The notes beneath the pieces were generated by a model. The model did no database searches, was not told the origin of the DNA, and was given only the letters and a program-made list of their open reading frames with translations. The translations under genes were made by a program, and so were the position numbers. 63,849 nt of DNA. Source: Gracilinanus agilis. Its lineage: Eukaryota. The stretch lies in NCBI RefSeq assembly GCF_016433145.1, contig NC_058133.1, positions 33,420,331-33,484,179 of the forward strand. The letters run 5' to 3'. Positions 1-54,194 of the stretch are shown piece after piece; the first letter of the stretch is position 1; each line of letters starts with the position of its first letter.

Positions 1-2135
1 GCTTTGAGGATGAAAACAAGCCTGGAGAAGCTCTCAGGCTTCTTGAGTGCCCAGCACTCCTCTGGAATAACTGAGGCCATTGAGTAGTAAGTAGCATCTG
101 AAGGCTGCAAGTTGGCTCTGACCAGCAAGGCCAGACCCCTGATCTGGACCCCAGCCTGCACCCATCCCCACCTCCTGGGGCGGAGCTGCTGGGCATAGAT
201 AAAGTCCAGTGAGCAAAGGGCACTTGTTGGGTGTCCAGGCCAAGCTCCTGCTCCAAGGACAGCAGCGGAGGAAAGCGGAGGCCACAGGGAACCAGGTACA
301 GTATCTGCTCTGTCCTGCTCTGCGTGCTGGGGAGATCGGCCGGGCTTGGGGGGACATGATCTGGGGGGACGATCTTTCAGGGTTCGCAAACTCTCCCCAA
401 TTTCAGGGTCCATGGGTCCCGCTGGGGTGAACACCCGGGACCCCAGATTTCCAGCTCCAGGGGCCTTAGAGCCTTAGAGACCCCTCATTTATCAGAGAAA
501 GAAAATGAGGCCCCACGGTCACGAGTAGGGCTGAGATTTGAATCCAGGGGTTCGGATTCTAAATCCATACCTTTTTCACCCAAATCTGGAAAGACTGAAG
601 ATATATTGGTCTTCTGGGAAAAGGGGGGGGGTGAGAAGTCAAGAAAATCTGGGGTAAAATAAGTGATATTAAGCCTATTTTTGTATGGAAAAAAATCAGT
701 ATTACCGATCTGTACACAAGAGAATATTTAGTGTTGGGGCAGAGGGGGGGACCGTGCTGCCAGAGTCCCCCTACCCATCTGGAGATCCCAGGACCCCACC
801 CCCGGGAGCCCTGAAACCCAATTTGGTCCATGTTCCTGTGGGGGTGGGAATGAGGGGCAGGCGTGTACGTGAGGCATGTACTGCCTCCTGACCTTGGGTT
901 ATATGGGGCTGGGAGATAAGGATTCTGGGGTCCATTACTGCCTCAAGCCTGGCTACAAGGCCCTGGTCACCAAGGATGTCAGGACTGGAAGGGAAATGGA
1001 GCCTAAACACCACCCTGACCCCCACCCGCCACCCCTCCTCACAGAAGAGGCCCAGAGGAGAGAGAATAGCCCAAAGTCATTCAGGCAGGGAGGATTAGAA
1101 CCCAGGGCATGGCTGGTATTCCTATTTGGTAATCTCCTCACCAGCACTGGAGGGCCTTTGGGCCTGCAGTCTTGGAAGGGGGCCGGGGTGTCCAGACCTA
1201 GGCCTGGGGTTGGAATTCTTTATCATGGAACCTGGAGCCCTAAAGGACCTTGGGGTGGGGATGGGAGCCAGGGAGGGGCCTAGGAGGAGGCCTGGGGCTT
1301 CTTTTCTGTTTGTCAGACTCCTGGGGGAGGTGGGGACGGAGGAAGCTGGGGACAGTCTGAACAAAGTCCTTTGTGGAGGAGGCAGCAGCGGCAGGAGGCC
1401 TTCCCCCGCCAAGGACACAGGATGACACAGCAGCTCAGGGGGAGGATGGGCTGGGCTGGCCTGGGTCAGAAGAGCCCCAGGCCTGCATCTCGCCTCTCAC
1501 ACCACTGAGCTAGGCCTTGTGGGAGGGGGAGGCCTCCCTTCTTCCAGCCTCAGTTTCCCCCTTGATGCTATGAGGCCACCCCTTGAAGTGGCCAGTTCTC
1601 GATGAGCCCATCCTCCCTTTTCCGAGGCCAGGGTTCCCTTTCGAAGGAGCCTCCTCTCGACTGCCCCATCAGTCTCCACTGACTGAGCCAAAATCCACGG
1701 GGAACTCAGGGTCCTGAGGGGAGCAGGAGGAGGCAGCCGAGCGTGAGCCTGGGGGCCGGGAAAGATGCCGGTGGCATCAAAAGAAACTGGGAAGAGGAGA
1801 AGAGGAGAGGGTTGGGGAGAAAGAGAGCGGAGTTCTGTTTGGGATGTAAAAAACTTTTCCTTACTCTACTGTGTATTGGCTCCAAGGCAGAAGAGCCATA
1901 AGGGTTAGGCCATGGGGGTGAAGTGACTTGCCCAGGGTCACACAGCTGGGAAGTGTCTGAGGCCAGATTTGAACCCAGGACCTCCTGACTCTCCATCCAC
2001 TGAGCCACCTCCGTGCCCCCACCTGGGGAAGATCTAAATCAAAATGTCTCTGGGTGTTGTGGGAATGAAGCTCAGGACAGAGTCTGGGGCTGGAGGCATA
2101 GATCCGGGAATTATCTCTGGTTGCTGGGGAGGTCA
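1..2135 (-). CDS. Candidate unidentified multi-exon protein-coding gene, continuing off the left edge. Proposed exons 2135-2023, 1197-1142, 984-893, 360-172 and 97-<1; speculative upstream exons 3428-3312 and 3116-3065
   Basis: AG/GT-bounded, stop-free, phase-compatible chain (1>0, 0>2, 2>1, 1>1, 1>open) giving ...PDILGDQGLVARLEAVMDPRILISQPHITQ-DHVPPSPADLPSTQSRTEQILYLVPCGLRFPPLLSLEQELGLDTQQVPFAHWTLSMPSSSAPG-DATYYSMASVIPEECWALKKPESFSRLVFILK. No homolog recognised. Confidence 0.4.
1861..2012 (-). mobile_element. Marsupial tRNA/CORE-derived SINE
   Basis: Antisense CORE motif aagtgacttgcccagggtcacacagctgggaagtgtctgaggccagatttgaaccc. Confidence 0.85.
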
Positions 2136-2337
2136 CTAAAAAACAAGAGAGGGAGACTAGGGGGCCCAGAACAGAGCTGCCTGTGGTTAGTGAAGACCCA
2201 GCAAAGGAGCCTGAGAAGGAGCAGCCAAACAGGGAGAAGGAAAACCAAGAGAGAATGAGCTCCAAAAACCCAGAGAGGAGAGAGCATCAGGAGGAAAGGG
2301 TGATGATGGCCAGAGAGGAGCAAAAAAAGAAATGAGG

Positions 2338-2790
2338 AGGGGCAGCTGGGTGGCTCAGTGGACAGAGGACCAGGCCTAGAGCCCAGAGGTCCTGGGTTCA
2401 ATTCTGGCCTCAGACACTTCCTAACTGTGTGACCCTGGGCAAGTCACTTGACCCCCATTGCCCACCCTTACTACTCTTCTGCCTTGGAACCAATACACAG
2501 TATTGACTCCAAGATGGAAGGTGAAGGCAAAAAAAAAAAAAAAAAAAAAAAAAGACAAAGTAGGACTTTAAAATAATAACAGGGGGCAGCTGGGTAGCTC
2601 AGTGGATTGAGAGTCAGACCTAGAGACGGGAGGTCCTGGGTTCAAATCTGGCCTCAGACACTTCCCAGCTGTGTGACCCTGGGCAAGTCACTTGACCCCC
2701 ATTGCCCACCCTTACTTACCACTCTTCTTCTTCTGCCTTGGAGCCAATACACAGAAGTTAAGGGTTTAAAAAAATATATAAAAAATAATA
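2338..2790 (+). mobile_element. Two adjacent marsupial SINEs (about 2338-2552 and 2583-2790)
   Basis: Each has a ggggcagctggg head with A/B boxes, a CORE body and an A-rich tail. Confidence 0.9.
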
Positions 2791-4394
2791 ATAATAGCTA
2801 CCATTTACATAGAGTTTACACATTATCCCATTTGCCTACTCTGAGAGATAGATGTGATCATTAACCCATTTCACAGATGAGAAAAGACTGGGACTGAGAA
2901 AGATGGTGTGATTTGTACAGAGTCAGTCCGAGTGTTGGAGGTGGGATTTAAACTCGGGCCTTGATCGCTGCAAGTTTAGTGCTCTGCCCACCAGGCTGCC
3001 TGGCCGCTTCCTCATCTAAGCAGAGAAGGCCCCCAATATTCCAAACAGATAAAGGGAGAGAAACCTGGGCCTGCCTGGGAGGGGCTGCCGTTCTCCTGCC
3101 GGTGACAGCCTGTGGCCTTGGAAGTTAAAGAAAAATTATTTGAGGAGGGAGAAAAAGACCAAGTGATGGCCTCCGGCCTGCGACAAATCCCTCATCTGCT
3201 CTGCATGCCTTGGTTTCCTCGTTTGCCAAATGGGGACAAGGCTGACATCTCCTTCCCGGAGTCCCTGTGAGGGTGGAACGAGAGAATGTGTGTAAAGGCC
3301 GCTATAACTACCAGGGAAGGCTGCGACCTCCGGCCTGGAGCTTCACAAATCCTCCCTGTTCCGGCCTCCACATCCTGCCCACGATGGCCTATTTCAGCCT
3401 CTTCCACCTCGGGGCTTGGCTGGTTCATCTTGTGCCAAGCCAGCCTGACTCAGCCGCTGCCTCCTCCGCTGCCCAGGCGGACGGGCACGTGCCAGCCTGC
3501 TTTCCCTTTCTTCCTCGTCCTTCCTCTCTCTTGTCCTTCTCTTCTCCTCCAATTTATTTTTTTAAGGCCTGCCCGTACGGAATAGAGGCTTGTCCTCGTG
3601 CGACATGCTTTTTCCTTCTGGCCGTGGGTGGAAATGCTGCCCGGACCTGACGTTGGCGAAGTTCTGAATAAAGATAAATGAATGGCTGGTGGTGGAGAGC
3701 TGGGACAAAACTGTGAGGGAGAATCCCCGGCTCAGAGGCAAGAGGGCCAACGGGCCTTAGCCACCTCCAGGCGCAAACCCCCTTGTTTTACAGAGGAGGA
3801 TACTGAGGCTAGAGAAGGGGAGGGCCTTGTAAGGAGTAGATTTGGTCCTAGAATGGGGCCTCAGACTCCAGCGCCAGCCCAGCTTCTATTTCTATCCAAG
3901 GGCCCCCACAACATCTGAGCCTCAGTTTCCCCATCTGCATGAAGAGAGGCCTGGACAACAGATACCTCCTCCATTCAAATCAACAACCCTACGATCCAGC
4001 CCCCTGTCTCTACTCAGGTGGCCGGATCCTGGAGGTCCCTGGAGCTCAGAGTGAGAGGCAGGAGGGCCAGGATCCTGCCAGGTTCTGAGGAAGATCCCTC
4101 TGACTGCTGAATGGAGGATGGAGGGGGACGGGAAGGCCAAATGGTAACTCCTCTGGCTGCCTGACCTCTTCTTCCCTCTCCAGACTTCCATATTATTATA
4201 TTATACAAATAGCATATATATATATATATAAAGAAAATTCTTGTCTCCACGCTGCATAGTCATGCCAAACAGTTCTTCCTGCTTCTCATACATGAGGCCT
4301 CCATCTCCCACCTCTTTACTTTTGCCCTGATTGACCCCTTCCCTGGGATGCTCTCCTTCCTCTTGGTCTCTCAAAGGTGCCCGTCACCTTCCAT

Positions 4395-4775
4395 GCCACC
4401 TTCTCTCCCATCCCCTTCATTGCCCCCTCCTTCTCCTTCCTCCTTCCCCTGCCTTCTCCTCCTCCCTCCTTCTTTCTCTTCCTCTCTCTTTCTCCTCCTC
4501 TCTCCTCCTCCTTTCTCTTTCTCTTCCTCTCTCTTCATCCTCTTTCTCTTCCTCTCCCCTCATCCTCTCTCTTTCTCCTCTTTCCTTCTTTCTCTTCTCT
4601 CTTTCTCCTCTCTCCTTCTTTCTCCTCCTCTCTCTTTCTCCTCCTCTCTCTTTCTCCTCCTCTCTCTTTCTCCTCCTCTCTCCTCATCCTCTCTCTCCTC
4701 TCTCCTTCTTTCTCTTCCTCTCTTCTCCTCCTCTCTCCATCCTTCTTCCCTCTTCCTCTCCCCTCCTTTGCCTCT
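4395..4775. repeat. Long imperfect (CT/CCT/CTT)n polypyrimidine tract
   Basis: About 380 nt that are almost entirely C/T. Confidence 0.95.
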
Positions 4776-5559
4776 GCCTCCCCCTTGTTCCCTTGGCAGT
4801 TGGGATTCTATCCCTCAAAGCCAGAGAGAACAAGGACATCAGGGGAGCTTGGCTTAGGGACACAGAGACCTTTGTCCTCTCACAATCTCACATTGTGAGG
4901 CTCTGGGCCTGCCCCGATGCCAGGCAAGAGGGACCGAGATGTGAAATTCCTCCTGGTGGGTGTCTGGACGGGTTGGCCAAGGCCTCTCCATCTTCTTCCT
5001 CCCCATTGCCCCCCACAACCTACTGCGGGAAGGTGCCTGTGCTCCCAAGACTGAGTCAGGCAACATGGCCTTAGGGCTGCTCAGCCTCATGCTAGGGCCT
5101 GGGGCAGTCAAGGAATTGGTGGCCCCCCAATCTGAGTGCATTAAGGCAGAGAGGAGTCAATGCTGCTAAGTGGGAAAAGCCCTAGACTAGAGGGTCAAGG
5201 GACCTGAATTCTAATGCTGCCGGTCACTGCCTCTATGACGCTGGGCCTCCCTTTACCCTCTGTAAAATGAAGGCCATATTCCACCACCTCTCAAGTCTCT
5301 TCTAACTCCAAGGCCTGTTTTATTCTCCTGGGGAGGACCTAGCGTTCTGTCTGGAGTTAGAGGCAGCCTTAGAAACCAATTCTGGCTCTCTCAACTTACA
5401 GATAAGGAAACTGAGGCCCATCATGGGGAGAAAACCTATGTGAAGTCAGGAAGAAAAGCATCATTTCAGCCTAGATCCTTGGGCTCCACATTCCCACGAT
5501 GCTGCCCTCCCAGAGAACAGAAGTTTCTTAAGGGCAGGCCCCGAGTTCTTTCTCTTTTT

Positions 5560-5757
5560 TTCTTTTAAATCCTCCTCTTCTATCTTAGAATCAATCTTGA
5601 GTATTGGTTCCAGGGCAGAAGAATAGTAAGGGCTAGGTAACAGGGGTTAAGTGACTTGTCCAGAGTCACACAGCTAGGAAGTATCTGAGGTCAAATTTGA
5701 ACCCAGGATCTCCAATCTCTAAGGCTGACTCTCCATCCACTGAGCCACCCAGCTGTT
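5560..5757 (-). mobile_element. Marsupial SINE
   Basis: Antisense CORE-SINE with T-rich tail. Confidence 0.85.
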
Positions 5758-5953
5758 CCCTAAGTTATTTCTTAATCTTTGTCTCCCTAATGCCTAACAC
5801 AGACAATGCCTTGAATGCAGTAGGTGCTTAATAGCCTTTTTTGAAGATATAAATGAATGAGTGAGTAAGTGAGTGAGTGAGGACAAAGAGAGGCTGCCTC
5901 TATGCCCGTCTCTCCTGACATCCGCCACTTTTGTTCTCCAGGCAGCTGGCAGG

Positions 5954-8900
5954 ATGGGTCCGCCAGGCCTCCCGCTGGCCATCCTGCTCGGGCTGCTGGG
6001 GGCTTCCCTGGCCTTTGAGAACAAGACGAGGTTCTGCCAACCGGCTCCGATGTGGCAAGTGGACGGAGGCAGAGCCCCCATGGAGGAAGCCCGGGGCAAT
6101 GTGACAGTGGTGGCCCTCCTGAAGGCCAGCTGACACTTCTGTCTCAAGCAAGCTGCCAGGTATCGGGCATGACAGGGATGGTTTCAAGGGTGGGATGGGA
6201 CAAAACGCAGCAGCTCCAGGAGCCAAGGGGCCCAGGCTGGCCCAACGGGCTCCAAGAGAGCCAGACTAATGGTCAACTGAAACTGGGTCAAAACGCTCCA
6301 GCTCATCCTTATGAGCCATTGGGCGATGGCACAAAGCTCATTTTGAGCCTCAGTTTCCCCATATCACAGATGCTTATAGTTGGAAAGGACCTCAGCAGGA
6401 ATGAGAGCCTGCCCCCTCCCTATCCCAGAAACAAATGGGCCTTATTAGGGCAGCCTCTACTTGCAGACCTACAAGGATGGGGAGCTTACCACCTCTCAAA
6501 GTAGCCCATCCTACTCAGGGCCAGTTCTCTCTGCTAGGAAACTTTTCTAGACACCCAACTTCAGTCTGCTTCTCCCTTGGCTCCTGGTCTTGCCCTCTGA
6601 GGCTAAGCAGGACAAGGCTGGCCCCTCCTCCACAGGATGGCATCTCGAGCCCTTGAAGACGGGTATCCGCTGGGGAAGAGGGATCCTCCCTGAATCTTCT
6701 TGTTTCCAGGCCAAATGTCCCAGGTCCTTCCCTTGAGCTTCCCATGGCATGAACTCCAGGCCCTTCCCCATCTGCCTGCCCTCCTCTGGACTCTCTCCAG
6801 CTCACAGCCTTACTCTCACCTCCTCTGTCCTTCTGAATGGAGCCCCAGACATCATGAGTTTTTGCCTGCCTTAACACACTATTGTTTGGGGGCAGCTAGG
6901 TGGCTCTGTGGATAGAGCACCAGATCTGAAATAGGAAGTCCTGGGTTCAAATCTGATCTCAGATACTTCTCAGCTATGTGACCCTGGGTAAATCACTTAA
7001 CCCAATTGCATAGCCCTTACTGCTCTTGGTACTCAGATTCAGTATCAATTCTAAATCAGAAGTGAAGGGCTTAAAAATAACCCTAAACCCCAAATCATAC
7101 ACTTATATGAATGAGGCTGTGGTCCACCAGGACCACCAGATTTCTTCCAGACAGGTTGCCATTCATCCCATCCTGTCTCCCACTAGCCTAGACTTAGAAA
7201 GGTGTTTTTTGAACCCAACCTTATGACACTGGTCCCACTGAATTTTATCTCCTACCACTTCATGGGAGGCCGGGGTGAAGCAAGAGCCAGTGAGAGATGG
7301 GAAAAGGGTGAAGGGGAGGAGGAAGCTCTTGGGGAATGGCTTCAAGTCTCTCAGAAAAATAAATGGGAGGCCAGGTTCTCCACTAACCCAAGTCTGGCAC
7401 TCGATCTCCCAGAAGGGAGTCGTGTGGAAAACACTTGGCAGCCAGCACTTGGGCACGGCAGGAACAGGGCCCCGGCTTTCACGAGGCCTCCTGGCAGTTC
7501 TGAGCTGAGCCGCCCTCAGTGCCTTCCCCTTCCTGGGCCAGCCCCCACGAGCGCCCTACTTTCTGGGCCTCTGTTCCTTGCCTGTTCCCAGGCCCAAGCC
7601 AACAGTGGGTTTATTCAGTGAGAGAGGAAAGGGGGAGGAAGAAGAGTGGGCGTAGGGAACCTGACCCAGAAACGGGATCTTTCTGAAAAGTAAACCCTTC
7701 CTTCACTCAAGGGGTCAAACGGACTCCTAGCTTGAGGCCCTTCCATCCAGCTGCTTCCTCTGCCTCCTCGCAGACTTCCAAGGAGGCTCAGAAATCGTCG
7801 AGGCAAGCCACACACGCACAACCCCCCAAGATCCTTTTAAGAGGAGAAAATGGCGGCCTTGTCCAAGGACTCAAAGGAAAACCAAGGCAGGGCTGGGCCT
7901 TGGCTCCTTTTCTCAGCACTCTCCTGCCGGCAGAGGCTCTGAGGTCAAGGGGGAAAGGAGGCCCCCCGAGGCTCAGCTCACCCGTCCCTCCCTTTTCCTC
8001 CTCAGCATGGGCAGCTTGCAGGAGCGCCTGGCCCGGTTGGGCGCTGCCGACGTCCGTTTTATCATAGTCAATGAGAAGTCGCCTCAGTCCCTGGCCCTGC
8101 ACGGGGAGCTGGAACGCCATGCCCCGCCAGGCATCCCTGTCTACGGCCAACCAGGGCCTGGCCCTGACATCTGGAGCATCCTCAGCGGGGCCAAGGATGA
8201 CTTCCTTGTCTATGACAGGTGAGACCCCGCGGCGAGGGCCAGAGAGGGCGGCCAGAGATCCTGAGCGCATCGGGGGGAATCAGGCAGCCCAAGGCCATCC
8301 TGAGCCTCTTGGGGCCGGGTTGTCTGATGCCCAAACATCCCGCCACTGAGCTCTTCCTGGGGGCGCCTTTCTTCCATCTGGGCTGGCTGGATTTCCTCCT
8401 CCCCGGGGTTGCCAGGCCTCTCCTCCCTCCCTTTCCTTGACTTGGCGGAGCTGCCCCACATCCCGTGGATCGGCTGACTGATGCACAAGAAGGGCGCAGC
8501 CTCCTGATCCGCCGGCCCGGCCGCCGGCTTCTCCCTGTGCCCCACTATATAGGGCCGTGAGAAGGATGTAGAAAGACTCAGAGTCGGCAGCCGACCGAAG
8601 TTCTGAGGCAGCATGAATTTCCCGGCCTTGGGGGTGGGGGTGGGGGCAATCGAGCCTTGAGAAGGGAGGGGGCGACTTCCCCAAGAGGTGGGCATAGTCA
8701 GGGGGCCCCAGGAGGCCCTCAGAGCCTCCTAATCCCACCCCTCCTTTTGTGAATGAGGAAACAGGCCCAGGGAGACCCAGGGACTGTCTAAAGTCAAATG
8801 GCAGGAGCAGGGCCAGGGGTGGGATTCAGATTCAGGCCCTGGAACCCCGAGCCCAGCACGCTCCCCACCTCAGGCGGGCTGCTCCCCCACCTCTGTCTGT

Positions 8901-10298
8901 CCTCACAGGTGTGGCCGCCTGACCTTCCACATCCGGCTGCCCTTTAGCTTCCTGCACTTCCCCTACGTGGAGTCGGCCATTCGTTTCACCCACCGGCACG
9001 ATAGTTGTGGAAACTGTTCTTTCTACCCTGCCCAGGTGAGACCCCGGAAAGGGCATGGTTGGCGGGCAGCCACGGGCATCCAGGCCTGGTGGCCTGAGAA
9101 GCATCAGGCATCCTCATCAGTCGTCCCATCAGACGGCTTTATTTCCTAAATGGGCAAAGGACCAGGGACTTACCCAAGGTCACACAGACAGAGAGTAACC
9201 GAGTGAAAAGAGACTCCCCACCTTCCCTCCCCTGCTGAGCACTCAGAGCCCCCATACGGTCTCCCTGAGCTATCGAGGCTCAAGTCTCCTACATGGGGTG
9301 AGCTTGCCCGGCCTGGACCGTAGGATCTGCCCATCCTTCAGTGCCTACCTGGAACCTCTTCCTCAGGGGTCTCCCCTTCAGCTCTGTGGAGGGTATCCTG
9401 AGGTGAACCCTTTGTTCAGAGCCTGGGGCTGGCTCAGGCTGTCCTGGAGAAGGCGGCCTGCCTACAGGCAGCTTATGAGTAAATCCTCAGCGCCAGCTGG
9501 CTGCCCTAAGCTGGACACGTGGAGCCACCTTCTCCCACACTGGCCAGCACGACCACCCAGAGTGCTAGGGCAGAGGCGTCCTCGGCTCGAGGGGAGCCCA
9601 CAGGAGCAGCCCCAGCAGCGAGCGACCAGGAGGCAGCCACCAGGGAGCCCCCACACCCACCCCATTGCAGCTGGGGCAGTTTGTGATTTGGAATCTTGTC
9701 CTCTTCCGCCTGTGGGGTCTGAGGAGCGCCTCAGGGGTGCTCTGGGGATGACCAGGGACATTTCTCCTCATGCTTAGCCTTGCAGAGAAAAGGGAGATGG
9801 GGGTAATCCCGAACCCAGGGCCGCACTCCCCGAGTACCCATGGCGATAGAAGCTAGCTCCAAAACGGAGTCACACGTAGCAAGAGAGGGAAGACAAGGGA
9901 CCCCCTTCCCCTCGGACGCCCCAGGGAGCTGGTAGACTGGCTCGGCCCCAACTTTGGGGCCTTCTTACAGGCTCCCCCACCCCAACCCCATCATCCACTT
10001 TCTAGTCCAAGCTGTCTAGCAGGGATGTGTGAAGTCAGGGAGTGTCACCCTCTGGTTTCCTCTCTAGGTGAACAGCACGGACGAGGAGAAGGTGGCGTCC
10101 ACTCAGTCCCCTGGCCTAGAAGGCCAAGGGCAGGAGCCCCTGGGTGAGAAGCCCAGCAGCCACAGGCTGACTCTGTGGTCAAGCGCCCTTCGCACTGCCC
10201 ACCCCCGTGATCCTGTCCAGGGCCACAGCGAGAAGCCATCCCTCAGCCTTCCTCCACACAGCCTAGAGCCATCCCGCGACGAAGAGGCCACTGGATAA
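5954..10298 (+). CDS. SELENOP2: Selenoprotein P paralog (SELENOP2 / SelPb-like), 258 aa with one Sec. Coding exons 5954-6159, 8006-8218, 8909-9035, 10068-10298
   Basis: Signal peptide MGPPGLPLAILLGLLGASLA, then VTVVALLKAS-U-HFC (TGA 6131-6133, UxxC), KDDFLVYDRCGRLTFHIRLPFSFLHFPYVESAI and CGNCS, all SELENOP N-terminal domain hallmarks. All introns GT-AG with phases 2/2/0; exons sum to 777 nt; TAA at 10296-10298; SECIS downstream. Confidence 0.93.
6888..7080 (+). mobile_element. Marsupial SINE in SELENOP2 intron 1
   Basis: ggggcagctaggtggctc head, ggttcaaatc B box, CORE body. Confidence 0.85.
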
Positions 10299-10524
10299 CC
10301 CTCGAATGGCCGCGGTCCCCGCCAGGTCCCCACCCTCCAGGCCGGCCCCAAGAGGGCCCCCCGACCCCATCCCCAACCTCATCTCCTGTCCAGCCGGCTC
10401 CTGTGTCAGAGGGGAGGAACTGAGGAGTCCCCGGGGCCATGATGGAGCCAGGAGGCCCTCAGCCCTATCTGTGTCCATCCGGGTTGTGGTCCACTTGCCT
10501 GTGGTGCTGGGCCATGCCCACTGC

Positions 10525-10612
10525 CCTTCCCTCCCTCAATTAATGATGCCCACAGTGAAACCCAGAGAACTGGTCATTGTGGGCTGATGCCACACAGAGA
10601 GGAGGGAGGAGG
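10525..10612 (+). promoter_or_regulatory. SECIS element (type 2) in the SELENOP2 3' UTR
   Basis: ATGA core 10543-10546; helix II GCCCACAGTG (10548-10557) pairs with CATTGTGGGC (10575-10584); unpaired AAA 10558-10560; apical mini-stem CCAG-agaa-CTGG; GA at 10586-10587; helix I CTCCCTC/GAGGGAG. Confidence 0.93.
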
Positions 10613-10710
10613 AGGAGGCTCCATTGTCCATACCCAGGCATGACTGTGAGCCCAGATGACCCACCACCAAGCTGGCCCTCAGAGGGGGTGGGAGGCTCGA
10701 GGAAGTGACC

Positions 10711-10716
10711 AATAAA
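10711..10716 (+). terminator. Probable polyadenylation signal of SELENOP2
   Basis: AATAAA about 100 nt after the SECIS. Confidence 0.7.
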
Positions 10717-11257
10717 CTTCTCTCTCCTGAGCCACCTCCCCAGCCTGCTTGAGGGTTTTCCGGGTATGAAGGTGATGGCAGGCTGCATGCGGGGCAGGGA
10801 GGGAGGCCGGAGCTCTACGACACTGGCAGGGCTGTGTGTGAGGGGGCACTTGGGGAGAGGGCAGCCAGCCTGGGCGTCGGAGAACAGGACTCCCAGCGGA
10901 GAGAGTCTGGGGAGTGTCTCCCCTCTACCATGGACCAGCCAGACCCTGGGGATGCAGAAACAAAACACCCCAGTTCCAGCCCTGCTGGAGCTTACATTCC
11001 CCTGAAGGATACAGTCTTTAAATGGAGATACCATGTAATCCAAGGGAGGTCACACCACAAGGAAGGGGAGGACTTCCTGGAGGAGGTGGGCCTGACCTGA
11101 ATCTGGAAGGAACCAGGGATTCAAAGAGGCAGGGAAGAGCGAGGCCAAGTCCTGGAAGGAGGATAGGCCAGCTTGGCTGTGTGGTAGCAAAGGGCTGCTC
11201 CAAGCAGGGTCCTGCCAAGCCAAAACTGTGCACAGGACTTCCAAGGCATTAAAAAAT

Positions 11258-11450
11258 AAAAAATACTTCACTTGAGTCTTAGAAGTGATACTGTGTATTG
11301 GTTCTAAGGCAGAAGAGTGGTCAGGGCTAGGCCATGGGGTTAAGTGACTTGCCTAGGGTCCCACTGCTAGGAAGGGTCAGGGGCCAGATTTGAGCCCAGG
11401 ATTTCGTCTCTTAGCCTTGATCTCTCATCACTGCACCACCTCGCTGTGCC
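11258..11450 (-). mobile_element. Marsupial SINE
   Basis: Antisense CORE-SINE motif. Confidence 0.8.
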
Positions 11451-12238
11451 AGTCCTGAGACATTTTCATGTCTAATCTGCTCTGCATCAGTAGCTATAAA
11501 CCATAGAAATAAAAGCTCTTGGCGGGGTCCTAATCATTTTGAAGGAGGTAAAAGCTGGTGTAGGGGGTGAAAAGGAGAAGTGGGAGGGACTCTAAATATG
11601 ATGCCTCGGACAGAGACTTGGGGGATCCCCAAAGTCTGGGGCGGGGGATAGACATGGAGGAAGATGGAGCGGTCAGAGAAGTTAGTGAGGATGACCCAGC
11701 TGGCCACTCAACTCTCATTTTTCAGAGGCCCACAGAGAGGCAGGGGCTTGGATGTGACTGTCCCCTGGGCGACTTGTCGAAGTCCTTGAAGAAACCCTCT
11801 AGGGAGGACCCACTGCCAACCTGGGGGGTTTCCTTCCGGGGGGGCTCTGAACCTCTGGGGGTCCCTGGCACTTCGAGCCCAGGATTATCTTGCTAGCATT
11901 CCCCACCACATACAGGGTACCTCTTCCTGCTTGTGGAGTCAGTGGGGACCTGGGCTCAAACTGATTGGGTGACCCTGGACAGATCACTTTACTTGGGTGA
12001 GACTCTTCTGTAAAATGCGTATCATCCCACCCATAGTGCCCCCTGGAAGGGTAGGGATGTGTGGAGGCTCCAGTGAGGTCCAGTTTGTGTGTGCTCTGTT
12101 GTCTTGGATATCATCCGAGATGTGCCCCTCACTCCATGCCCGGTCACCCTATAGCCTGAATCAGCTGGCTGCTCTCCTTCTTGGTTCTCTGCTGTCCTTT
12201 GAGGGGTCCTGATTTTCCCAGCCAGGGAAAGAGATCGC

Positions 12239-15801: not shown

Positions 15802-18975
<3,174 letters not shown>

Positions 18976-24821: not shown

Positions 24822-35995
<11,174 letters not shown>

Positions 35996-51557: not shown

Positions 51558-54194
<2,637 letters not shown>

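What the first reader, a model, noticed from the sequence alone, without database searches (positions are those of the whole stretch)
5954..10716. Intact single-Sec selenoprotein P paralog (SELENOP2/SelPb) hidden by an in-frame UGA
Seen: the ORF track stops at TGA 6131-6133, but homology, frame and splice sites continue through three more exons, and the 3' UTR holds a SECIS. Known: SELENOP starts with a signal peptide and a thioredoxin-like UxxC domain; the short paralog SelPb occurs in non-placental vertebrates and was lost in placentals, and humans have no such gene beside UROD. Inference: a functional secreted redox selenoprotein retained in this marsupial, easily mis-annotated as truncated or as a pseudogene.
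Basis: partly seen in the sequence, partly recalled or inferred. Interest (0 to 1): 0.88.

Follow-up and report, generated by a model that had tools for sequence, protein, structure and literature searches.

The report
Intact single-selenocysteine SELENOP2 gene, marsupial
This is an intact copy of SELENOP2 (selenoprotein Pb), a secreted single-selenocysteine redox protein that marsupials are already known to keep and placental mammals have lost; it is an ordinary but easily mis-annotated gene.

Summary
On the + strand, four coding exons (5954-6159, 8006-8218, 8909-9035, 10068-10298) with GT-AG borders splice into a 258-codon frame. That frame has one in-frame TGA (6131-6133), in the motif ALLKAS-U-HFC. 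The first three pieces match consecutive parts of Pfam SelP_N.

A SECIS hairpin lies at 10533-10601 and an AATAAA signal at 10711-10716. An intronless, cDNA-like contig from a related opossum-like assembly (82% protein identity) maps onto the window at exactly these junctions. It also reveals an upstream non-coding exon at 218-295, so the gene spans about 10.5 kb.

The TGA, the exon structure and the SECIS are conserved in Sarcophilus, Antechinus and Dromiciops. dN/dS against the opossum-like copy is 0.22 over the domain. A tree puts the protein inside the marsupial "selenoprotein Pb-like" clade, apart from placental SELENOP. UROD lies next to it, tail to tail, as in other marsupials.

SelPb/SELENOP2 is published as present in marsupials and lost in Eutheria.

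Two modest additions:
- All seven public marsupial protein models I retrieved avoid the Sec codon.
- A hairpin 14 nt after the UGA forms only after splicing. It is conserved, with compensatory changes, from teleost to marsupial, and resembles SRE1 of SELENOP.

Other notes of this scan flagged that hairpin and the SECIS on this same window.

The parts
218..295 (+). Non-coding exon 1 (5' UTR); the true 5' end may lie further upstream. The donor is CAG|GTACAG at 295/296.
   Evidence: L001 bases 1-78 align here at 93.6% identity. The donor was read. The block about 115-355, including the donor, is conserved 4-5.5 kb upstream of the Sec exon in Dromiciops, Antechinus and Sarcophilus.
5946..6159 (+). 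Exon 2: 8 nt of 5' UTR, ATG at 5954, signal-peptide-like residues 1-20, then the Sec codon and the UxxC motif.
   Evidence: Acceptor CAG| at 5945/5946, inferred from the L001 mapping. Translation. Pfam SelP_N positions 2-36. Hydrophobic core at residues 6-16, followed by ASLA|FE.
6131..6133 (+). In-frame TGA, codon 60, read as selenocysteine within ALLKAS-U-HFC.
   Evidence: The same TGA in the same context is present in L001, Sarcophilus L002, Dromiciops L003 and Antechinus L004. It is also present in a bird transcript contig and a teleost SELENOP2 transcript contig.
6148..6157 (+). 5' arm of a 10-bp hairpin that starts 14 nt after the UGA. The hairpin forms only in spliced mRNA.
8010..8019 (+). 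3' arm of the same hairpin, located in the next exon.
   Evidence: the spliced 70-nt segment folds at -37.5 kcal/mol against -14.2 unspliced; 90% of core cells are paired across 8 mRNAs against 21-42% when slid, with compensatory changes at three pairs.
8006..8218 (+). Exon 3 (second coding exon).
   Evidence: Pfam SelP_N positions 47-116, E 1.5e-16. The junctions are confirmed by L001.
8909..9035 (+). Exon 4 (third coding exon), holding the conserved CGNCS motif.
   Evidence: Pfam SelP_N positions 118-155, E 6.8e-16. 97.6% identical to L001 at the protein level.
10068..10298 (+). Coding part of exon 5: a Pro/Ser-rich tail of 76 residues with no further TGA, ending in TAA at 10296-10298.
   Evidence: No Pfam hit. 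dN/dS 0.64 against L001.
10299..10735 (+). 3' UTR.
   Evidence: L001 aligns up to 10733. Only the 3' half, the part around the SECIS, can be aligned among marsupials.
10533..10601 (+). Single type-2 SECIS element: AUGA core, unpaired AAA, a 4-bp mini-stem and UGAU on the 3' side.
   Evidence: Rfam SECIS_1 at 27.4 bits, E 0.041, below the gathering score. Fold z -5.8. 80-85% identical in four other marsupial loci, with AAUGA, AA and CUGA invariant. 85% of cells are paired against about 50% when slid. The same architecture occurs in pigeon and in a bird transcript.
10711..10716 (+). AATAAA polyadenylation signal.
   Evidence: Read. It is conserved in L001, which ends 17 nt after its own copy of the signal.

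Best explanation
The region is the orthologue of SELENOP2 (SelPb/SELENOPB). It is a five-exon gene with a non-coding first exon, spanning about 218-10735 on the + strand. Its mRNA encodes a 258-residue precursor with three parts: an N-terminal signal peptide, a thioredoxin-fold SelP_N domain with a selenocysteine in a UxxC motif, and a short fast-evolving tail that has neither a His-rich run nor a Sec-rich run. The UGA at codon 60 is recoded to Sec by the single type-2 SECIS in the 3' UTR. A hairpin that spans the exon 2/3 junction 14 nt downstream of the UGA probably helps, in the manner of SRE1 in SELENOP. Shown here: the intact reading frame, canonical splice sites, the same junctions in a spliced copy from a relative, conservation of the TGA and SECIS across marsupial orders, purifying selection on the domain, placement in the SELENOP2 clade, and shared synteny with UROD. 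Inferred: secretion, Sec insertion in this species, a thiol/selenol oxidoreductase or peroxidase-like activity, and the stimulatory role of the hairpin.
For: The gene model and the single TGA come. SelP_N hits fall in consecutive order. The SECIS is supported. L001 is an intronless 1106-nt contig carrying a 5' UTR, ATG, in-frame TGA, TAA, SECIS and AATAAA; it maps to the window as colinear blocks that end at the predicted junctions. dN/dS is 0.22 over residues 1-181 at dS 0.22, and 0.36 overall. The TGA exon is conserved in Sarcophilus, Antechinus and Dromiciops. The nearest proteins are named selenoprotein Pb-like in seven marsupials. The tree gives 99% SH-aLRT for the marsupial clade holding the window and 98% for the split of named SelPb from placental SELENOP. 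The order SelPb, then UROD on the minus strand, then a HECT gene holds in the window and in other marsupials. A family model has pLDDT above 90 over the domain, places the CxxC at the strand-helix junction, and matches TlpA/ResA/DsbE-type and peroxiredoxin thioredoxin folds at Foldseek probability 1.00. The hairpin is conserved with compensatory synonymous changes. SRE1 in SELENOP stimulates Sec insertion (PMC5727441). The literature describes SELENOP2 as single-Sec, lost in Eutheria and present in marsupials (PMC3316567; 10.1101/2025.05.29.656587).
Against: There is no transcript, ribosome or protein evidence from this species itself. The Rfam SECIS score is below the family's gathering threshold, and the orthologous SECIS elements did not reach E <= 1 in a 70-kb search. 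With only five close sequences, SECIS covariation is weak. L001 sits in a genome assembly, so it may be a processed retrocopy or cDNA contamination rather than a transcript; either way it derives from spliced mRNA. The C-terminal tail is nearly neutral (dN/dS 0.64). The Dromiciops orthologue shows an in-frame stop in exon 3, so the gene can decay in some marsupial lineages. No biochemical function of any SELENOP2 was found in the papers searched.
Confidence: 0.9

Rival explanations
1. A decaying pseudogene or truncated gene. The TGA is a true stop, the product is a 59-residue peptide or nothing, and the downstream 'exons' are relics.
For: Standard ORF calling stops at 6133. The gene was lost in placentals. 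The Dromiciops copy has an in-frame stop in exon 3. The Rfam SECIS score is below threshold.
Against: Three further exons stay in frame with intact GT-AG sites. dN/dS over the domain is 0.22. The TGA and its context are identical in five marsupial lineages, a bird and a teleost. The SECIS core is invariant while the rest of the 3' UTR has diverged beyond alignment.
Confidence: 0.04
2. The canonical multi-Sec selenium-transport gene SELENOP (SELENOP1), with its Sec-rich C-terminal exon missed.
For: It shares the SelP_N domain, the UxxC motif and the exon pattern with SELENOP.
Against: The tree separates it from placental SELENOP with 98% support. Over exon 3 (window 8007-8216, the second coding exon) it is 33-41% identical to SELENOP-type proteins, against 84% to wombat SelPb. 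The frame ends in TAA with no further TGA. Only one SECIS was found in 5000-12000. Exon 5 has no SelP_C or other Pfam hit. The UROD synteny is shared with other marsupial SelPb loci.
Confidence: 0.01
3. An intact SELENOP2 gene whose protein does not act as a redox enzyme. It could for instance be a binding or signalling protein that uses the Trx fold as a scaffold, or the Sec could serve only a structural selenenylsulfide.
For: No activity of SELENOP2 was found in the literature searched. Frogs and sharks replaced Sec with Cys without losing the gene. The tail evolves fast, and in this species it keeps only three scattered histidines, without the His-rich runs seen in bird and fish tails.
Against: The U/CxxC pair sits at the canonical active-site position of a thioredoxin fold and is kept as U or C throughout. 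Keeping costly Sec decoding for about 500 My argues for catalysis.
Confidence: 0.12

Closest known systems
SELENOP2 / SelPb / SELENOPB of non-placental vertebrates (Mariotti et al. 2012, PMC3316567; BMC Genomics 2026, PMC13134290)
   Same: It has a SelP_N domain, a single Sec in UxxC, a single SECIS and no Sec-rich tail. It is orthologous to marsupial 'selenoprotein Pb-like' genes by tree and by synteny with UROD.
   Different: Nothing essential differs. The tail lacks the His-rich run that bird and fish SelPb carry, and the public marsupial models omit the Sec exon or part of it.
SELENOP (SELENOP1), the plasma selenium transporter
   Same: A paralogue with the same N-terminal thioredoxin-like UxxC domain, a signal peptide and the same exon plan with a non-coding first exon (the SELENOP exon plan is from my own knowledge, not tested here). 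It also has an RNA stem just after the first UGA (SRE1, PMC5727441).
   Different: SELENOP has a C-terminal domain with many more Sec residues and two SECIS elements. The gene here has one of each, and it sits in the other clade of the tree.
SECIS element, Rfam RF00031 (type 2)
   Same: It has the AUGA/GA quartet, an 11-bp helix II, unpaired AA and an apical mini-stem, and it lies in the 3' UTR about 245 nt after the stop.
   Different: It scores 27.4 bits, below Rfam's gathering score of 35.
SRE1 of SELENOP and the Sec redefinition elements of other selenoprotein mRNAs
   Same: A stem-loop a few nucleotides 3' of the Sec UGA, at the homologous codons, conserved through synonymous compensatory changes.
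   Different: Here the two arms lie in different exons, so the stem exists only after splicing. Its effect on recoding in SELENOP2 is untested, and it was not mentioned in the papers I read.
TlpA/ResA/DsbE-type thiol-disulfide oxidoreductases and peroxiredoxins (structural neighbours)
   Same: Thioredoxin-like fold with the redox motif at the beta1-alpha1 junction.
   Different: Sequence identity is only 9-17%. These proteins are bacterial or intracellular and carry no selenocysteine.

Membership tests
SELENOP2 (SelPb) | SelP_N (PF04592) domain | tested here: met
   Three exon pieces hit profile positions 2-36, 47-116 and 118-155, each above the cut-off.
SELENOP2 (SelPb) | A single in-frame UGA in a UxxC motif of the N-terminal domain | tested here: met
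   There is one TGA in 258 codons, in the context AS-U-HFC. It is conserved in orthologues.
SELENOP2 (SelPb) | No Sec-rich C-terminal domain; normal stop codon | tested here: met
   The exon 5 tail has no TGA, ends in TAA and has no Pfam hit.
SELENOP2 (SelPb) | One SECIS in the 3' UTR | tested here: met
   There is a single SECIS_1 match in 5000-12000, at 10533-10601. It is below Rfam's cut-off but is conserved in four marsupial loci and in birds.
SELENOP2 (SelPb) | Groups with SELENOP2 and not SELENOP1 in a tree | tested here: met
   99% SH-aLRT for the marsupial SelPb clade and a 98% branch between named SelPb and placental SELENOP. The tree uses 115 columns and the quick method.
SELENOP2 (SelPb) | Conserved genomic neighbourhood (beside UROD/HECTD3) | tested here: met
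   URO-D on the minus strand at 16.8-17.8 kb and a HECT gene at 33.6 kb in the window. The same order holds in Trichosurus, Dromiciops, Antechinus and Sarcophilus.
SELENOP2 (SelPb) | Secretory signal peptide | tested here: inconclusive
   A hydrophobic core at residues 6-16 and an ASLA|FE site align with the N-termini of homologues. No dedicated predictor was available.
SELENOP2 (SelPb) | Expressed, with Sec actually inserted | not testable with these tools
   Only indirect evidence exists: a spliced copy in a relative and purifying selection.
SELENOP (SELENOP1) | Multiple Sec codons in a C-terminal domain plus two SECIS elements | tested here: not met
   One TGA and one SECIS.
SECIS (Rfam RF00031) | Score at or above the gathering threshold of 35 bits | tested here: not met
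   27.4 bits, E 0.041. The core motifs and the helices are nevertheless present and conserved.
Sec redefinition element (SRE-like stem after the UGA) | Conserved stem close to the 3' side of the UGA, with covariation | tested here: met
   A 10-bp stem 14 nt after the UGA. 90% of cells are paired in 8 mRNAs against 21-42% when slid. Compensatory changes occur at pairs 20-39, 23-36 and 24-35.
Sec redefinition element (SRE-like stem after the UGA) | Raises the efficiency of UGA recoding | not testable with these tools
   This needs a reporter assay. It has been shown only for SRE1 of SELENOP (PMC5727441).
Thioredoxin-like fold oxidoreductases | Trx fold with the redox motif at the beta1-alpha1 junction | tested here: met
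   The model was built on the shark Cys homologue with an alignment that includes marsupial sequences. pLDDT is above 90 over residues 31-150, and the best PDB matches are Trx-like proteins at probability 1.00. This model is of a homologue, not of the window's own protein.

The most novel reading that the evidence does not exclude
The stem that forms across the exon 2/3 junction 14 nt after the Sec UGA may be a splicing-dependent recoding enhancer, shared by SELENOP2 mRNAs from teleosts to marsupials and homologous to SRE1 of SELENOP. That would date this RNA element to before the SELENOP1/SELENOP2 duplication at the root of vertebrates. The papers I read do not describe it for SELENOP2.
Probability: 0.45. 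Interest if true: 0.35.

Novelty: already known. Interest (0 to 1): 0.2.

Why it matters
Mostly as an annotation matter. The gene is real and intact, yet every public marsupial protein model I retrieved skips or truncates the Sec codon: koala, wombat, brushtail possum, Tasmanian devil, antechinus, opossum and monito del monte. Any catalogue built on those models would under-count marsupial selenoproteins. This general problem, and a tool to fix it, are already published (PMC12822975). A correct five-exon model with the non-coding first exon, the SECIS and the post-UGA stem would be useful to anyone studying why placentals could lose this gene, or what a single-Sec SELENOP paralogue does. That function is still unknown.

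Tried and rejected
- Rfam scan of four orthologous loci together (70 kb): no SECIS reached E <= 1. The search space was too large for a hit of about 27 bits.
- Rfam scan of the pigeon locus: it also missed the SECIS. A pattern search then found a SECIS of the same architecture.
- SECIS covariation on five marsupial sequences: too little divergence to be informative, with 2 double changes against 1.1 expected.
- The look-up of encoding contigs for wombat P0001: not on record. No DNA was returned for Trichosurus or the shark because the files are too large.
- The pigeon Sec exon lies in an assembly gap of that record. I left it unfilled.
- PDB sequence search with the family profile: no solved relative.
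- Organism of assembly GCA_029782595.1 (L001): the tools could not name it.
- Pseudogene reading and canonical-SELENOP reading: both considered and rejected; see the rival explanations.
The pieces were searched apart, and the spliced protein was used only inside scripts, with X at the Sec position.
Full report
**What is in the sequence.**
The mechanical ORF list ends one frame at TGA 6131-6133 (ORF 5873..6133). From ATG 5954 the frame reads a hydrophobic N-terminus, then ...NVTVVALLKAS, the TGA, then HFCLKQAA up to a GT donor at 6160. The stretches 8006-8218, 8909-9035 and 10068-10298 each begin after a pyrimidine tract plus AG. The first two end before GTGAGA.

Joined, the four pieces give 777 nt, which is 258 codons plus TAA. 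The TGA at codon 60 is the only internal stop. There are no N runs inside the gene; the window's N runs lie at 25756-25954, 27214 and 30782-30829.

**Family.**
Searched apart, the exon pieces hit Pfam SelP_N at profile positions 2-36, 47-116 and 118-155, all above the curated cut-off. The last exon hits nothing.

A whole-library HMMER search with the 70 residues of window 8007-8216 found 112 relatives. The best were 84% identical. Cluster look-ups and a second search name these "selenoprotein Pb-like" or "SelP N-terminal domain-containing protein" in seven marsupials: wombat, koala, brushtail possum, Tasmanian devil, antechinus, grey short-tailed opossum and monito del monte. Next come bird SELPB, then frog, caecilian, shark and fish SelPb-like proteins.

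The window's spliced protein was used only in scripts, with X at the Sec position. It is 82% identical to an opossum-type protein (P0175), 76% to wombat and 64% to Tasmanian devil. The source is therefore a marsupial, closest to the didelphids among those sampled.

**Tree.**
The tree has 90 rows and 115 columns covering the second and third coding exons. The window falls in a clade of marsupial SelPb proteins plus one unnamed relative, with 99% SH-aLRT support. This clade is sister to bird SelPb. A branch with 98% support separates all named SelPb proteins from the four placental SELENOP proteins.

**Splicing evidence from a relative.**
P0175 is encoded on L001, a 1106-nt contig of assembly GCA_029782595.1. 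L001 is intronless. It carries a 5' UTR, an ATG, the same in-frame TGA, TAA, a SECIS and AATAAA.

It aligns to the window as colinear blocks:
- 218-295
- 5943-6159
- 8003-8216
- 8910-9039
- 10066-10304
- 10518-10733

Its donor is CAG|GT at 295/296, and it is joined to an acceptor at 5945/5946. That exon, its donor and roughly 100 nt upstream are conserved 4-5.5 kb upstream of the Sec exon in Dromiciops, Antechinus and Sarcophilus. The gene therefore spans about 218-10735.

L001 lies in a genome assembly, so it may be a retrocopy or cDNA carry-over. In either case it derives from spliced mRNA.

**Selection and conservation.**
Against L001, dS is 0.24. dN/dS is 0.22 over residues 1-181 and 0.64 over the tail.

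The signal-peptide and Sec exon, with TGA in ALLKAS*[H/Q]FCL, is present in the genomic loci of Sarcophilus, Dromiciops and Antechinus. It is also present in a bird transcript contig and a teleost SELENOP2 transcript contig from public RNA-seq assemblies.

**SECIS.**
- Rfam SECIS_1 matches 10533-10601 at 27.4 bits, E 0.041. This is below the gathering score of 35.
- The element folds into a 12-bp lower helix, an internal loop holding AUGA and UGAU, an 11-bp upper helix, unpaired AAA and a 4-bp mini-stem. This is a type-2 SECIS.
- The fold energy is -43.2 kcal/mol, z -5.8.
- It is 80-85% identical in four other marsupial loci, while the first 200 nt of the 3' UTR cannot be aligned.
- AAUGA, AA and CUGA are invariant.
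- 85% of the pair cells are standard pairs, against about 50% when the partners are slid. With five close sequences, covariation is not informative.
- Pigeon and the bird transcript carry a SECIS of the same build.
- Only one SECIS was found in 5000-12000.

**Stem after the UGA.**
In spliced mRNA, 6148-6157 pairs perfectly with 8010-8019. This gives 10 bp with a 6-nt loop, starting 14 nt after the UGA. The unspliced sequence has no such stem.

Across eight mRNAs, 90% of the core pair cells are standard pairs, against 21-42% with slid partners. The eight are the window, L001, three marsupial loci spliced in silico, the bird and teleost SELENOP2 transcripts, and one SELENOP1 transcript. Three pairs change on both sides through synonymous substitutions.

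This resembles SRE1, the stem just after the first UGA of SELENOP, which stimulates Sec insertion in reporter assays (PMC5727441). That paper does not mention SELENOP2.

**Fold.**
No solved relative was found by sequence. An AlphaFold model was built on the natural Cys-form shark homologue, with an alignment that includes the marsupial proteins. Its pLDDT is above 90 over the domain, and it places CxxC between strand 50-56 and helix 61-79.

Foldseek matches TlpA/ResA/DsbE-type thiol-disulfide oxidoreductases and peroxiredoxins at probability 1.00. The redox reading is thus structurally reasonable, but it remains an inference for this protein.

**Neighbourhood.**
URO-D ORFs lie on the minus strand at 16841-17774. 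A HECT-domain ORF lies at 33600-33869 (+), and a nucleotidyl-transferase ORF typical of EIF2B3 lies at 51558-51812 (+). The order SelPb, UROD (minus strand), HECT gene is also seen in Trichosurus, Dromiciops, Antechinus and Sarcophilus.

**What is known.**
Mariotti et al. 2012 list SelPb in fish, birds, platypus and marsupials. They state that it was lost before the split of placentals (PMC3316567). A 2025-26 study restates that single-Sec SELENOP2 was lost in Eutheria and became a Cys homologue in frogs and sharks (10.1101/2025.05.29.656587 = PMC13134290). The Cys forms appear in my hits too. Widespread mis-annotation of selenoprotein genes is also documented (PMC12822975).

In line with that, each of the seven marsupial models retrieved has one of these faults:
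- it replaces the Sec exon with a spurious upstream exon (koala, possum, antechinus);
- it splices around the UGA (devil, opossum);
- it starts right after the UGA (wombat);
- it is truncated (Dromiciops).

**Verdict.**
The thing itself is a routine orthologue of a known gene, in a lineage where it is known to persist.

This follow-up adds three things: the corrected five-exon structure, the demonstration that the public marsupial models all miss the Sec codon, and the conserved junction-spanning stem. Expression, Sec insertion and biochemical function in this species remain untested.

Noticed in passing
window 1-3428: Another note of this scan reads this stretch as an unrecognised gene lying head-to-head with SELENOP2. 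SELENOP2's own non-coding exon 1 lies at 218-295 on the + strand, and 296-5945 is its first intron. Anything in that stretch is therefore inside or overlapping SELENOP2, not upstream of it.
   Followed up: partly
window 195-222: Just upstream of, and overlapping, the 5' end of exon 1 lie ATAGATAAAG and GAGCAAAGGGCA. In Dromiciops, Antechinus and Sarcophilus the second motif reads GAGCAAAGGTC. It looks like a nuclear-receptor DR1 / HNF4-type half-site pair, which would fit liver expression. That resemblance is recalled from memory and was not tested.
   Followed up: no
window 16841-17774 (-): UROD lies tail-to-tail with SELENOP2. One open frame of 220 codons (17115-17774) covers URO-D profile positions 76-201 without interruption.
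   Followed up: partly
window 33600-33869 (+) and 51558-51812 (+): A HECT-domain exon (HECTD3-like) and a nucleotidyl-transferase exon whose sequence reads like the start of EIF2B3. The gene order matches the UROD-HECTD3-EIF2B3 block; the order as it is in human is recalled from memory.
   Followed up: partly
L003 (Dromiciops) 9907-10104: The orthologous exon 3 runs into an in-frame stop just before the conserved KDDF motif, and the annotated protein switches frame there. This is either a real frameshift (possible gene decay in this lineage) or an assembly error.
   Followed up: no
L001 (GCA_029782595.1, contig JARCCX010335561.1): This 1106-nt contig of a genome assembly is a complete intronless SELENOP2 mRNA copy, from the 5' UTR to just past the AATAAA. 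It is either cDNA carry-over or a young processed retrocopy.
   Followed up: partly
Proteins P0113, P0116, P0003, P0118, P0119, P0001, P0120: All seven public marsupial SelPb models lack the Sec codon. The faults are a spurious first exon, an internal skip, a start after the UGA, or truncation.
   Followed up: yes
window 4213-5071: A long purine/pyrimidine-biased low-complexity tract inside intron 1. Its open frames read as Glu/Arg/Lys/Gly runs on one strand and as Ser/Leu/Pro runs on the other.
   Followed up: no
window 29770-30320: A CA/TG dinucleotide-repeat region; its open frames read as His-Thr or Cys-Val repeats. It lies next to the 48-nt N run at 30782-30829.
   Followed up: no
L005 (pigeon) 1-6505: Pigeon SelPb lies beside a MUTYH-like gene (HhH-GPD, NUDIX_4) and a glyoxalase-fold gene. 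By my recollection this is the same chromosomal block as mammalian UROD. The pigeon Sec exon falls in an assembly gap at 9803-9952.
   Followed up: no
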